From Asterias rubens (lineage: Eukaryota), in NCBI RefSeq assembly GCF_902459465.1, contig NC_047067.1:4588001-4652000 (forward strand): DNA of 64,000 nucleotides, in the 5' to 3' direction. Position 1 is the first letter of the stretch, and each line of letters begins with the position of its first letter. The notes beneath the pieces were generated by a model that saw nothing but the letters and a program-made list of their open reading frames with translations, was not told the origin of the DNA and ran no database searches. This document shows, in pieces, positions 18,300 through 30,808 of the stretch. A program made the translations under genes and the position numbers.

Positions 18300-19602
18300 T
18301 TGCCCTGGATCGGATCAGTATTGGGCCGGCAAAAAGATCGAGTCTTCATCAAGACAGGGCCACCAATTGCACCAAAAGCAATATAATAGAATGGGTACAA
18401 TATTCTACATAAATACTGAATTTGCCTAGCAAACACGGGCGGGGAAACAGGAATTACAGGCCTCATTATTGCGAGACCAAAAAATGTCTTTTTTGTGTGT
18501 AGAAAGATGCAAGGCGCCCAAATTAATGTCTTCATAAAATAATTGGTCCTCACGATCAATTGTCTCGAACACGGACACAATTCACTCTTCCCTACTACAC
18601 ACAAAATTGTGTTTCGTGTCTCTTGCATGACGAATGTTGCAGCCGCTAGATAATGGTACAAGGGTACATGCACTGTCAACAATGATTCTCGCGCATCCCA
18701 AACAAATATTTCTTTTGGACATCCGGCCTCCTGTTGTGACATTTTTTATGTGAATTGCGTTAGGTTATCGTACCGATCGTTTCTCAGACTACAAACACGA
18801 AACGGGAAAGTCCCGAAATAAAAGGCCTATAATAAATTCAGACACGGAAATCTCTGCACAGGAAGCAAAACACACAAAACGCATTATTTACGGTGAGAAA
18901 AAAACAATAAACGGAGTTTTTCGAACAACAGTGTTTATCAGATTGTTCACCAGGGAAAAACCGTGTTCACCGAGATATACTTTATTTATCAAGCGATATA
19001 GACATTGGAGTTTCTCGAAAAAGAATATATTGCGCGCACAGAAAACACAGTTTATGGCGCAATGTTTATCGAATTTTGGGCATTTGGCTTGCCATATCTA
19101 ATATCCGGTTGGGGTCGATGACCGACCTAGCAAATGGCTGCTTCCTGTGTCCTGTTTTATTGTGCACAAAACTGCAGCCCTAACGGCAACGTCGTCTTTG
19201 TGTTCCGTCCCAACTTGATAATCGTCCCAACTATATAGTTGGGACTGGTCCCAACTTGAGTGCTAAAGTTGGGGCGTCCCAACTATATAGTTGGGACAGT
19301 ATAGTTGGGACAGTAATGCTCGGCATGGGACCGGTCGGTGGTAGACTGCTTCATGGTGTGGGCTAGTCTTGAAATCAAGTCGGTAATTGTTTGTGGCTGG
19401 AGAGTGGCGGTGCGTAGTAGAAGGGTTTGAGTGGGCAAATTAATTATTCTCAAGAAATTCTTAATATAGTTTTATGTTGAAAATTACAGTGTTACGCGTT
19501 TGAGCCTACTTGTACAAATAGAGATGAACTTGAAACAAACAAATAAACATGCCTATGCATGGGCCAAGACAACTTGAACAAGCGAGGTCAAGTTATTTCT
19601 AC

Positions 19603-20500
19603 AGTTGGGACTGCGGGTCCCAACTAGAGTAATGACTGTCCTAACTGTACCAATGACTGTCCCAACTATAGTTGAGACCATCTCTACCTGATAAAATATT
19701 ATAAAATAAATTTGGTCTATCCCCACTACAGTTTGGACAGTCATTACTCTAGTTGGGACTACGGGTCCCAACTAGAGTACTGACTGTCCTAACTGTACCA
19801 ATGACTGTCCCAACTATAGTTGAGACCATCTCTACAAAATAAAATATTATAAAAAAAATTTGGTCTATCCCCACTACAGTTGGGACAGTCATTGCTACAG
19901 TTGGACTGGGGGTCCCAACTAGAGTAATGACTGTCCCAACTGTACCAATGACTGTCCCAACTATAGTTGAGACCATCTCTACAAAATAAAATATTATAAA
20001 ATAAATTTGGTCTATCCCCACTACAGTTGGGACAGTCATTACTCTAGTTGGGACTGCGAGTCCCAACTAGAGTAATGACTGTCCTAGCTGTACAATGACT
20101 GTCCCAACTATAGTTGAGACCTTGTTGAGACCATCCCTACCAGATAAAATATTATAAAATAAATTTGGTCTATCCCCACTACAGTTGGGACAGTCATTAC
20201 TACAGTTGGGACATGGGGTCCCAACTAGAGTAACGACTGTCCTAACTGTACTAATGACTGTCCCAACTATAGTTGAGACCTTGTTGAGACCATCCCTACC
20301 AGATAAAATATTATAAAATAAATGTGGTCTATCCCCACTACAGTTGGGACAGTCATTACTACAGTTGGGACCCCACTAGAGTAACGACTGTCCCATCTTC
20401 TATGAGGAGACCATCCCTACCACTCAGCTAAAATAATTATCAACCCGGGCCCGGGCCTATCCCACTACACCGAGTTGGGACAGTCAACCCATTGGTACAG
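19603..20500. repeat. Tandem array of ~6 units of 147-159 bp rich in GTCCCAAC/GTTGGGAC
   Basis: Unit starts at ~19603, 19751, 19899, 20046, 20204 and 20363; the same octamer forms the outer TIR. Confidence 0.9.
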
Positions 20501-20507
20501 TTTGGAA

Positions 20508-20578
20508 TAGTCTTGGCCCAAGACTATGGTGCTTGATTCTGGACCAGAATCAAGCACCATAGTCTTGGGCCAAGACTA
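20508..20578. repeat. Perfect 71-bp palindrome (35-bp arms, 1-nt loop)
   Basis: TAGTCTTGGCCCAAGACTATGGTGCTTGATTCTGG-A-CCAGAATCAAGCACCATAGTCTTGGGCCAAGACTA; a third copy of the arm is at 30650-30684. Confidence 0.95.
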
Positions 20579-21330
20579 GTCGACTCCCGGCGCGGCCCCG
20601 ACAGTGTGAAGTTGGTTTGTCGACGATTTATTGTTGTATGGTGGCCATAGACATGGCAGCAAACAGTCGTACACCAGCGCCGAGCAGAGGAGGAGTGCCA
20701 GTAAACAGTCGTATGTACAACAAACTAGCAAAATGGCGACTAACTGTTTTTTTTGCAAAAGAACAAACTTCCTAATTAAACATAAGATCAAATCAATTCT
20801 AACACAAGAGAGTGCGATCAATTGTCTTAATTTGACAAATCTCGAATTTGAAGAAGGTATCATGTGCCCAGAATGCAGAAAAGTGGTATATTTCTACGGA
20901 AGAAAAATTAAAAAAAAAAGAAAAAAAAGTATTGGGTTTGTAAACTTTGTGGTTAGGATAATGATTAAACCAAATACGAAGATCGACTTTCAAAACGGAA
21001 TTCCCAAGAATCTAACAGACTCCACCACACAGCAGCCACACAGCCATGAAGGAGAAGGAGGAGAAGGAGAATCAAGGGTATGTATTCTGTTTACTCCAGT
21101 CCAGAACTCGTCGTACGAAACCCACCAATTCAATACCCAGCCTTGAACACCCAGCAGGGTGGATATGTGCGCATTACAAGTGTTACTATTATTATTATTA
21201 TTATATTAATAGCCCCACTTGAAGACCTGTGTGGCCAAGGCTACCTTCTATTCTAGCAAGCATTCAGCTAGCCCTGGCGGCCTTACACTTTCGTTTTGTA
21301 CTACAGTGACGTCCTGGACATCAGGGTACA

Positions 21331-29600: not shown

Positions 29601-30071
29601 TTGGAATCAGGGTGTTGAAAATGGCAGTTTAAAAAAAAAGTTACAGTAATGTAGTACTGCATTAACTGTAACACTATTTTTACCCCCAAAAAACACTTTA
29701 TCAGCTACAAACAGGGATGATAATTTGCAATAAGATTTTATTTACATTTGAGTTGACAATACAAGAAGATAAATGTAGAGTTGCTCAAATGGTGAAGAGT
29801 GAACCATTGATATAATTCTTTTAAAAAACCCATTCCGATAATACTTTCCATACGGATTAAACTGTAGATGATCCTAGTTTGGTCAAAATTCAAAACGTGA
29901 AGTTAATTTCTACTTGCATTATATCCAAAGTGAAAAATCTAGTGGTATTGTTTTAAAATTCCTTTCAGTTAAATAACTTTCAGTTAAATAAAATTAAGTG
30001 CATTAAATTTGTTTTGTAGTTTGATGTCAAATTATTTGTTTCATATGTTGTATTATTAAAAAAGTTCAAGC

Positions 30072-30409
30072 TTAAAGACAATGGACACCTTTGGTAATTG
30101 TCAAAGGCCAGTCTTCTCACTTGGTGTATCTCAACATGATACGCATAAATAATAAACCTGTGAAAATTTGAGCTCAATTGGTCGTCGAAGTTGCGAGATA
30201 ATAATAAAAGAAAAACACACACCCTTGTCACCGAAGTTGTGTGGTTTCAGATGCTTGATTTCTAGACCTCAGAATCTTATTTTGAGGTCTCGAAATCAAA
30301 TCTGTGGAAAATTACTTCTTTCTCAAAAACTACATTACTTCAAAGGGAGCCGTTTCTCACAATGTTTTATATTATCAACATCTGTAGTTACCAAATAGTG
30401 TCCACTGCC
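30072..30409 (-). mobile_element. TTAA MITE family copy
   Basis: ttaaagacaatggacacctttggtaattgtcaaag ... tagtgtccactgcc. Confidence 0.8.
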
Positions 30410-30649
30410 ACAAACATTACAGATCTGTGGTAAGACAAAAAAATCGTGAGATCACAGATTTACTTAAAATGGTCTAATGATGATGGTAGTAGAAAACATC
30501 CCTTGAAATTTTTCTGTCTGAAATGAAATGTCATTTGATGAGAAATACAAAATCTAATTTCGCTTTTGGATTTATTTCAAGCCGTCCATTTAACTAAATT
30601 ATATCGTGGCGGGCGCACTTTGGCGATTCAACCGCGCGTAGTACACTAT

Positions 30650-30684
30650 CCAGAATCAAGCACCATAGTCTTGGGCCAAGACTA
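30650..30684. repeat. Third copy of the 35-bp TAGTC arm (candidate right TIR)
   Basis: CCAGAATCAAGCACCATAGTCTTGGGCCAAGACTA, identical to 20544-20578. Confidence 0.95.
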
Positions 30685-30808
30685 AGTTTAAGTAGGATTT
30701 GAAACTTTGCATGGTTGGGACCTGTCCCAACTATAGTTGGGACGATTATCAAGTTGGGACGGAACATGTGTGTACCAGATACCGTACATCTTTGCCTTTA
30801 CCCAACAC

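What the first reader, a model, noticed from the sequence alone, without database searches (positions are those of the whole stretch)
19201..30766. 11.6-kb region bounded by two nested pairs of inverted repeats: composite foldback element or transposon-in-transposon
Seen: an outer ~54-bp inverted pair (TGTTCCGTCCCAAC..., 19201 and 30766) and an inner perfect 35-bp pair (20508-20542 and 30650-30684). The left arm is expanded by ~6 tandem ~150-bp GTCCCAAC-rich units; the right arm is only 117 bp. A transposase-like gene starts 155 bp inside the left inner repeat. Model 1: one foldback element with asymmetric modular arms. Model 2: a 10.2-kb Academ-like element (TAGTC...GACTA ends) inserted into a ~1.4-kb TGT...ACA (Ginger-like) non-autonomous element. 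Neither pair has a clean TSD (TTTG/TGTG; AGTTTGGAA/AGTTTAAGT), so the history is unresolved.
Basis: partly seen in the sequence, partly recalled or inferred. Interest (0 to 1): 0.7.

Follow-up and report, generated by a model that had tools for sequence, protein, structure and literature searches.

The report
Decayed Academ-type transposon nested in another
This is one jumping gene lying inside another in a probable starfish genome: a broken 10.2-kb copy of a helicase-type "Academ" DNA transposon sits inside a small non-coding transposon of an unrelated family, which is ordinary biology but gives both families their defining features.

Summary
Both inverted-repeat pairs are real and are not chance. 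Each 35-36-nt arm is perfect, none is expected in shuffles, and the 418-Mb genome holds only about 60 and 110 such arms.

The two arm types belong to two independent transposon families.
- **Outer family (TGTTCC...GGAACA).** These are 0.1-1.8-kb non-coding elements with 4-bp target duplications. They are packed with the 8-mer GTCCCAAC and carry their own 148-bp tandem array.
- **Inner family (TAGTC...GACTA).** These are hairpin MITEs and 2.5-26-kb elements, all with 9-bp target duplications.

The single-foldback model is therefore rejected. Transposon-in-transposon is supported.

The inner unit carries a canonically spliced gene for the N-terminal half of a DUF6589-family protein. Elsewhere in this genome, DUF6589 genes pair with RecQ-like helicase genes, which is the AcademH layout. 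The usual members of the inner family hold a decayed RecQ-like helicase relic. AcademH is reported to make 9-10-bp duplications.

I read the unit as a defective relic of the family's autonomous AcademH-type element.

The junctions are damaged:
- The left end is a 71-bp micro-palindrome.
- The right arm is cut at a microhomology.
- Only 5 of 9 duplication bases survive.
- About 100-150 bp of the host element is lost.

Read data and sister-species loci could not be checked. Other notes of this scan already call related DUF6589 elements of this genome Academ.

The parts
19197..19200 (.). Left flank TTTG of the outer element. It pairs with TGTG at 30767-30770 as a 3-of-4 match, the probable 4-bp target-site duplication.
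   Evidence: Family rule: of 14 paired copies, 6 have a perfect 4-bp duplication and 4 have 3 of 4.
19201..20507 (+). Left 1307 bp of the outer non-autonomous element (TGTTCC... end). It includes the roughly 100-bp terminal inverted repeat at 19201-19301.
   Evidence: Aligns over its full length with other family copies L007, L008, L003 and L004. 28 of the window's 32 GTCCCAAC sites lie here.
19591..20371 (+). Tandem array of 148-bp units, 5.1 copies, internal to the outer element.
   Evidence: Other family copies carry the same units in varying number.
20499..20507 (.). Left flank AGTTTGGAA of the inner unit. This is the presumed 9-bp target site within the outer element.
   Evidence: The first 5 nt recur at 30685-30689.
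20508..20543 (+). Left terminal arm of the inner family (TAGTC...). Only the first 36 nt of the family arm are present.
20544..20578 (-). Inverted copy of the same 35 nt. With 20508-20543 it forms a 71-bp micro-palindrome that has both family termini.
   Evidence: (I12).
20733..28319 (+). Five-exon gene with canonical GT-AG introns: 20733-21077, 24882-25013, 25935-26263, 26960-27161, 28233-28319. It gives the 364-aa protein P0002. Exons 3-4 are homologous to the N-terminal module of DUF6589 proteins. Homology runs on to about 27245 and then stops.
   Evidence: No DUF6589 domain or helicase anywhere in the window. The exons are single-copy in the genome.
21495..22613 (+). Fragment of a LINE reverse transcriptase lying in intron 1.
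   Evidence: RVT_1, E 3e-12. Flanked by a 155-nt inverted repeat at 21331-21485 and 22880-23034.
27491..27884 (.). Copy of a very abundant repeat of about 400 bp, about 90% identical to many loci.
   Evidence: 22,824 first-look candidates.
28847..30573 (+). 3' part of the unit, shared at 82-92% with an inverted partial paralogue about 42 kb upstream (contig C6, 4563988-4565803). That paralogue also holds 20651-20759 at 95%. It includes the G-rich tandem repeats at 29152-29581.
30574..30684 (-). Right arm of the inner family (...GACTA), 111 nt. Its inner edge coincides with the end of the paralogue homology at a GATTT microhomology.
30685..30713 (.). 29-bp junction piece beginning AGTTT. It stands in place of about 125-180 bp of the outer-family sequence.
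30714..30766 (-). Terminal 53 bp of the outer element's right end (...GGAACA).

Best explanation
**Proposed history**
1. A small non-autonomous DNA transposon of the TGTTCC...GGAACA family (4-bp duplication, many GTCCCAAC sites, internal 148-bp array) inserted here first.
2. A unit bounded by the ends of a second, unrelated family (TAGTC...GACTA, 9-bp duplication) then inserted into it. The site lies about 220 bp from the host element's right end on the family consensus.
3. That unit is the decayed relic of the second family's autonomous element, of the AcademH type, with a transposase gene reading inward from the left end.
4. It later lost the catalytic half of the transposase and the helicase gene. 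It picked up a LINE fragment and other repeats in its introns and 3' part. It was also damaged at both junctions.

**Shown**
- The two families are independent.
- Each has its own duplication rule.
- The arrangement is nested.
- The gene is truncated.

**Inferred**
- DUF6589 is the Academ transposase.
- This copy was once autonomous.
- The order of the damaging events.
For: **The families are independent.**
- Outer arms occur as pairs 0.1-1.8 kb apart without inner arms.
- Inner arms occur as MITEs of about 230-300 bp (7 of 7 with a 9-bp duplication, one carrying a mismatch). They also bound elements of 2.5, 4.4, 10.7 and 25.9 kb (duplications perfect, perfect, 8/9, 8/9), none with outer arms.
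- All 32 GTCCCAAC sites of the window lie in the outer parts and none in the 10.2 kb.

**The pairing is not chance.** The genome holds 60 and 110 arms.

**The Academ link has three strands.**
- Exons 3-4 match the N-terminal module of DUF6589 proteins at E 1e-10 and 36-39% identity.
- Two diverged loci pair a RecQ-like helicase with a DUF6589 gene. Both genes are 39% identical between the loci.
- The usual inner-family members hold a helicase relic with recognisable motifs. tblastn gives E 3e-5 to 4e-3 with the first helicase and 1e-3 with the second.

**Literature.** PMC10045372 states that AcademH makes 9 or 10-bp duplications.

**Trace of a duplication here.** The first 5 of 9 flank bases match.
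Against: - **No intact 9-bp duplication at this copy.** About 100-150 bp of the host element is missing on the right.
- **The left end is odd.** It is a complete 71-bp micro-palindrome rather than a normal 111-135-nt arm.
- **The right arm is cut short at a microhomology.** The cut lies exactly where the homology to a nearby armless paralogue ends.
- **The interior differs from the rest of the family.** It shares nothing with the usual 4.4-kb family interior apart from the arms.
- **No intact copy exists.** No copy in the genome joins these arms to a full transposase.
- **DUF6589 was not compared with reference Academ sequences.** A low-confidence model showed no nuclease fold.
- **The helicase relic is weakly supported.** Pfam did not detect it in the open pieces.
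Confidence: 0.55

Rival explanations
1. Composite or chimeric unit. A 71-bp micro-element and half of a second MITE of the TAGTC family came to flank unrelated DNA. This could happen by macro-transposition from two nearby copies, or by abortive gap repair with template switching after an excision. The Academ-type gene piece would then be cargo, not the element's own gene.
For: - The left end is a full micro-element with both termini.
- The right arm is cut 10-25 nt short of the family arm, at a GATTT microhomology, exactly where the paralogue homology ends.
- The right junction carries a 5-nt filler-like piece and a loss of about 100-150 bp, which looks like a break-repair scar.
- The interior is unrelated to the usual family interior.
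- A partial, armless, inverted copy of the interior lies 42 kb away in cis.
Against: - The cargo would have to carry a DUF6589-family gene by coincidence. The genome has only about 17 DUF6589 hits.
- That gene starts about 150 bp inside the end and reads inward.
- It sits within a family whose other members show a helicase relic and the AcademH duplication length.
- No parent copy of the gene exons exists elsewhere in the genome.
Confidence: 0.25
2. The inner family is Mutator-like (MULE or Pack-MULE style: 9-bp duplication, long terminal repeats). The DUF6589 gene piece and the helicase relic would then be unrelated passengers.
For: From general knowledge, 9-bp duplications and terminal repeats above 100 bp are the classic Mutator signature. 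The family has both.
Against: - No Mutator-type transposase domain was found in the ORFs of the window or of the family members that were scanned.
- Two independent Academ-type gene relics lie inside members of the family.
Confidence: 0.08
3. One foldback-type element of 11.6 kb with modular, asymmetric arms.
For: The outer element is rich in short inverted sub-repeats and has a tandem array, as foldback elements do.
Against: - The array and all GTCCCAAC sites belong to a family that exists on its own at 0.1-1.8 kb.
- The inner arms exist on their own with a different duplication length.
- No other locus among those listed or examined combines the two arm types.
Confidence: 0.02
4. Assembly artefact or chance neighbourhood of unrelated repeat fragments.
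For: - The palindromic junction and the lack of clean duplications could arise from a mis-join.
Against: - Arm densities of one per 3.8-7 Mb make a chance pairing negligible.
- The outer halves fit one family member end to end, apart from the junction loss.
- The 71-bp palindrome is flanked by unique sequence on both sides.
Confidence: 0.05

Closest known systems
AcademH lineage of the Academ superfamily (DNA transposons encoding a transposase plus a helicase; Kojima 2020, as summarised in PMC10045372 and PMC10799480)
   Same: - The inner family makes 9-bp target duplications.
- Helicase plus DUF6589 gene pairs are present in this genome.
- The usual family members hold a helicase relic.
- The nearest protein clusters are from Basidiomycota and Mucoromycota, taxa where AcademH is reported.
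   Different: - This copy has only the N-terminal half of the gene, and that half is spliced.
- It has no catalytic domain, no helicase and no intact duplication.
- Its left end is a micro-palindrome.
- Homology to reference Academ sequences was not testable here.
Ginger1/Ginger2 DNA transposons (4 bp, or 4-5 bp, duplications; PMC10045372)
   Same: The outer family has TGT...ACA termini and a 4-bp duplication.
   Different: - No integrase-like gene or autonomous partner was found.
- Every copy I fetched whole lacks a recognisable transposase gene.
- Several other superfamilies also make 4-bp duplications.
Nested transposon insertions and hairpin MITEs derived from autonomous DNA transposons
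   Same: - One element interrupts another.
- Short palindromic derivatives share only their arms with the larger elements.
   Different: The junctions here are damaged, so the insertion cannot be undone cleanly.
Pack-MULE-type capture and abortive gap-repair chimeras
   Same: - Family ends flank an interior unrelated to the other members.
- There is a microhomology at an internal junction.
   Different: - The interior has no parent locus elsewhere in the genome.
- It carries a transposase-family gene rather than a host gene.

Membership tests
Nested (transposon-in-transposon) insertion | Each repeat pair belongs to a family that occurs on its own elsewhere | tested here: met
   Outer. Inner.
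Nested (transposon-in-transposon) insertion | Removing the insert restores a continuous host element with one copy of the insert's target duplication | tested here: not met
   The left flank is collinear with the family. On the right, about 125-180 bp of family sequence is replaced by 29 bp. Only 5 of 9 duplication bases match.
AcademH (Academ superfamily) | 9-10-bp target-site duplication | tested here: met
   Eleven of 11 family copies examined have a 9-bp duplication: 8 perfect and 3 at 8/9. The rule is taken from PMC10045372. This copy itself has only 5/9.
AcademH (Academ superfamily) | Encodes the Academ transposase | tested here: inconclusive
   Only the N-terminal module, homologous to DUF6589 proteins, is present. 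The equation of DUF6589 with the Academ transposase rests on gene pairing with helicases and on unchecked notes of this scan. No reference sequences were available.
AcademH (Academ superfamily) | Encodes a helicase | tested here: not met
   There is no helicase in the window. A decayed RecQ-like relic exists in other members of the same terminal-repeat family.
Ginger1/2 | 4-bp (or 4-5-bp) duplication and TGT...ACA termini | tested here: met
   6 perfect and 4 at 3/4. The window has 3/4. Termini are read directly.
Ginger1/2 | Integrase-like (retroviral-type) transposase in the autonomous partner | not tested
   No autonomous copy was found among the loci fetched. Further fetching was blocked.
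Foldback element | Two long homologous arms built of the same sub-repeats make up the element's ends | tested here: not met
   The 148-bp array is on one side only and is internal to small family members. The right side is 53 bp of terminus.
Mutator-like element / Pack-MULE | Mutator-type transposase, or captured host gene fragments with a parent locus | tested here: not met
   No such domain was found. The exons have no second copy in the genome.

The most novel reading that the evidence does not exclude
The unit is not a plain relic. It would be a cargo-bearing chimera made when ends of an AcademH-derived hairpin MITE were rebuilt by abortive gap repair, or moved as a composite. That would be a first sign that Academ-type elements can pick up and move foreign DNA, as Pack-MULEs do. 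The 71-bp micro-palindrome and the microhomology junction would be its scars.
Probability: 0.2. Interest if true: 0.45.

Novelty: new member of a known kind. Interest (0 to 1): 0.3.

Why it matters
- **It resolves an odd-looking structure.** The 11.6-kb region breaks down into two ordinary transposon families and gives each its defining features: ends, duplication length and size range.
- **It ties dispersed relics together.** A starfish hairpin-MITE family is linked to the little-studied AcademH lineage through three pieces: the transposase half here, the helicase relic in other members, and intact-looking helicase plus DUF6589 pairs elsewhere.
- **It is useful for repeat annotation.** It also gives a working reading for Pfam DUF6589.
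- **It does not reveal a new kind of element.**

Tried and rejected
**Searches that found nothing useful**
- Pfam on all long ORFs of the region gave only a LINE reverse-transcriptase piece.
- The protein atlas gave unnamed fungal clusters and a weak DUF6589 lead. A second atlas search found nothing.
- The word-based protein search with the Acanthaster relative returned only that protein itself.
- The PDB sequence search of a DUF6589 protein found only its PHD finger.
- AlphaFold2 on a 17-row alignment gave a poor model (pLDDT 55.6). Foldseek again found only the PHD finger, so there is no fold evidence for or against a nuclease core.
- Pfam did not recognise the helicase relic in its short open pieces.
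- The inner and outer arms show no similarity to the ends or interiors of the other DUF6589 loci.
- The paralogue's flanks show no significant arm remnants.
- No tRNA-like part was found.
- Literature searches for DUF6589 and for Academ features gave little. The AcademH paper itself is not held.

Exons were searched one by one.
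Full report
**Setting**

The window is contig C6, 4588001-4652000, of a 417.6-Mb assembly in 150 contigs. Its size and its 22-23 large contigs made me suspect the starfish Asterias rubens. The closest long protein relative is from Acanthaster planci. Other notes of this scan name Asterias rubens. I did not verify the species. The region lies between zinc-finger genes.

**Observation**

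- Both inverted pairs exist. The outer pair is 19201-19235 and 30732-30766 (35 nt, perfect). The inner pair is 20508-20543 and 30649-30684 (36 nt, perfect).
- Shuffled windows give no match to either arm.
- In the whole genome there are 60 outer arms and 110 inner arms at up to 3 mismatches, against 0 for the reversed control patterns. That is one arm per 7 Mb and one per 3.8 Mb, so the pairings are not chance.
- The tandem array is 19591-20371, period 148, 5.1 copies.
- The left inner arm is followed at once by its own inverted copy, 20544-20578. The left end is therefore a 71-bp palindrome carrying both family termini.
- The right inner arm is 111 nt long (30574-30684) when measured against other copies.

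**Outer family**

- Its arms occur elsewhere as facing pairs 0.1-1.8 kb apart.
- Of the 14 paired copies, 6 have perfect 4-bp duplications (TCCT, TACA, AATT, GCTT, GTAG, GAAC) and 4 have 3 of 4. The remaining 4 (L002, L004, L006, L022) match at only 1-2 of 4, some with damaged ends. The window has TTTG/TGTG, which is 3 of 4.
- The window's left part, 19201-20507, aligns end to end with other copies, including their 148-bp units.
- All 32 GTCCCAAC sites of the 64-kb window lie in 19207-20481 and 30714-30760, where 1.6 are expected. None lies in the 10.2 kb between. I infer that this 8-mer is the family's protein-binding site.
- The copies I fetched whole, including a 5.9-kb pair whose flanks match at only 2 of 4, have no recognisable transposase.
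- TGT...ACA ends with a 4-bp duplication fit Ginger1/2 as summarised in PMC10045372. The defining integrase-type gene was not found, so the superfamily stays open.

**Inner family**

- Seven hairpin MITEs of about 230-300 bp, with arms of 111-125 nt, all have 9-bp duplications. Six are perfect and one carries a single mismatch.
- Four large members also have them: 4.4 kb and 2.5 kb perfect, 10.7 kb and 25.9 kb at 8 of 9.
- The large members share 83-95% identical interiors with one another. They share only the arms with the window unit.
- They hold no DUF6589 coding sequence.
- They do hold a decayed RecQ-like helicase C-terminal relic, with stop codons but with recognisable motifs (CQSRK, a GxDV-type motif, SGRVGRDE, CCDxCA). 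tblastn with the helicase ORF of locus L026 gave E 3e-5, 5e-4, 6e-4 and 4e-3 on four members. The helicase of L035 gave 1e-3.
- These four members are copies of one family, so they count as one observation. Pfam did not see the relic in its short open pieces.

**The gene in the unit**

- A search of 1.8 billion representatives with exon 4 found a 364-aa protein identical to the window (P0002) and 31 relatives.
- P0002 is reproduced exactly from five exons with canonical GT-AG introns: 20733-21077, 24882-25013, 25935-26263, 26960-27161 and 28233-28319.
- Exons 3 and 4 match the region just upstream of the DUF6589 domain (PF20231) in longer relatives: P0004, P0022 and P0025, and also P0005, the one long relative in which Pfam reports no DUF6589.
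- Homology runs in frame to about 27245, near a good donor at 27250, and then ends.
- The window holds no DUF6589 domain and no helicase. The gene is therefore the N-terminal half only.
- Its exons are single-copy in the genome.

**What DUF6589 is**

- The genome has 17 DUF6589 hits.
- One group is a repeat of about 9.4 kb that is 99.7% identical between copies. It has a GDSL-esterase ORF and a 2004-aa ORF carrying OTU, DUF6589 and a CXC domain. Other notes of this scan call it an Academ element. Those notes are leads only.
- Two other loci, L026 on C10 and L035 on C15, each place a RecQ-like helicase gene (DEAD, Helicase_C, RecQ zinc-binding) about 3 kb from a convergent DUF6589 gene.
- The two loci are not alike as DNA. 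Their helicases are 39% identical (3e-65) and their DUF6589 parts 39% identical (3e-85). The pair has therefore diverged together as a unit.
- A transposase plus a helicase is the described layout of AcademH, which makes 9 or 10-bp duplications (PMC10045372; distribution in fungi and animals, PMC10799480).

Three separate lines point to an AcademH origin of the inner family:
- the duplication length;
- the helicase relic in the usual members;
- the DUF6589-family gene half in this copy.

**Junctions**

- In other outer copies, the sequence ending ...TACAGTTTGGGA runs on for about 125-180 bp to the terminal 53 bp.
- In the window the break falls after ...AGTTTGGAA, and only 29 bp (30685-30713) stand before the terminal 53 bp.
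- Those 29 bp begin AGTTT, the first 5 of the 9 left-flank bases. The chance of that is about 1 in 1000. After a 5-nt stretch, GGA follows. I read this as a once-normal 9-bp duplication later damaged by a deletion with filler (inferred).
- The right arm stops 10-25 nt short of the family arm, at a GATTT microhomology.

**A nearby partial copy**

- About 42 kb upstream and inverted (C6, 4563988-4565952), a partial copy holds 20651-20759 (95%) joined to 28847-30573 (82-92%).
- It lacks the 8.1 kb with the exons and it lacks both arms.
- Its homology ends exactly at the inner edge of the right arm. Its flanks show no significant arm remnant.
- No simple history accounts for this copy. It is the main reason I keep a chimera or composite origin as a serious rival.

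**Verdict**

- The nested arrangement and the independence of the two families are well supported (about 0.9).
- That the inner unit is a decayed autonomous AcademH-type copy is the best reading (about 0.55).
- A composite or gap-repair chimera carrying that gene piece as cargo is the main rival (about 0.25).
- The single-foldback model is rejected.
- Reads, sister-species loci and reference transposon libraries could not be consulted.

Noticed in passing
window 21331-23034: The LINE reverse-transcriptase fragment (21495-22613, a 373-aa open frame) sits between two inverted 155-nt arms that are 86% complementary (21331-21485 and 22880-23034). It looks as if it landed in, or was framed by, a palindromic repeat.
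   Followed up: no
contig C6, 4563988-4565952 (L023 3989-5953, minus strand): This is a partial inverted copy of the unit's 5' leader, its first 9 codons and its 3' 1.7 kb. It has no arms and carries an inverted CCAAT-box palindrome just upstream. Its origin is unexplained.
   Followed up: partly
L026 (C10:4630000-4639999) and L035 (C15:14040000-14049999): Two diverged loci each hold a RecQ-like helicase gene convergent with a DUF6589 gene. Both genes are about 39% identical between the loci. They are candidate AcademH elements whose ends were not defined.
   Followed up: partly
L030 (C24:642700-652400); also C64, C32 and L040: A repeat of 9.4 kb or more, 99.7% identical between copies, has a GDSL-esterase ORF followed by a 2004-aa ORF (OTU + DUF6589 + CXC). 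I saw no terminal inverted repeats or duplication at the ends of the shared block.
   Followed up: partly
window 27491-27884 and 30072-30383: Two repeat pieces that lie within about 1 kb of each other at many other loci are 2.2 kb apart here. The first has more than 20,000 first-look candidates in the genome.
   Followed up: no
window 20508-20526 and every inner-family end: The terminal 19 nt of the inner family is itself a near-perfect palindrome: a 9-bp stem around one central base. That base is C at left ends and G at right ends.
   Followed up: no
window 29152-29581: G-rich tandem repeats of 14-66-bp periods (GGGGTTTTGTGGATGGGTT-like). They give a strong local GC skew.
   Followed up: no
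L033 (C10:4620000-4624960): About 4.9 kb is open in several frames on both strands. It has no Ns, so it is probably low-complexity or tandem sequence.
   Followed up: no
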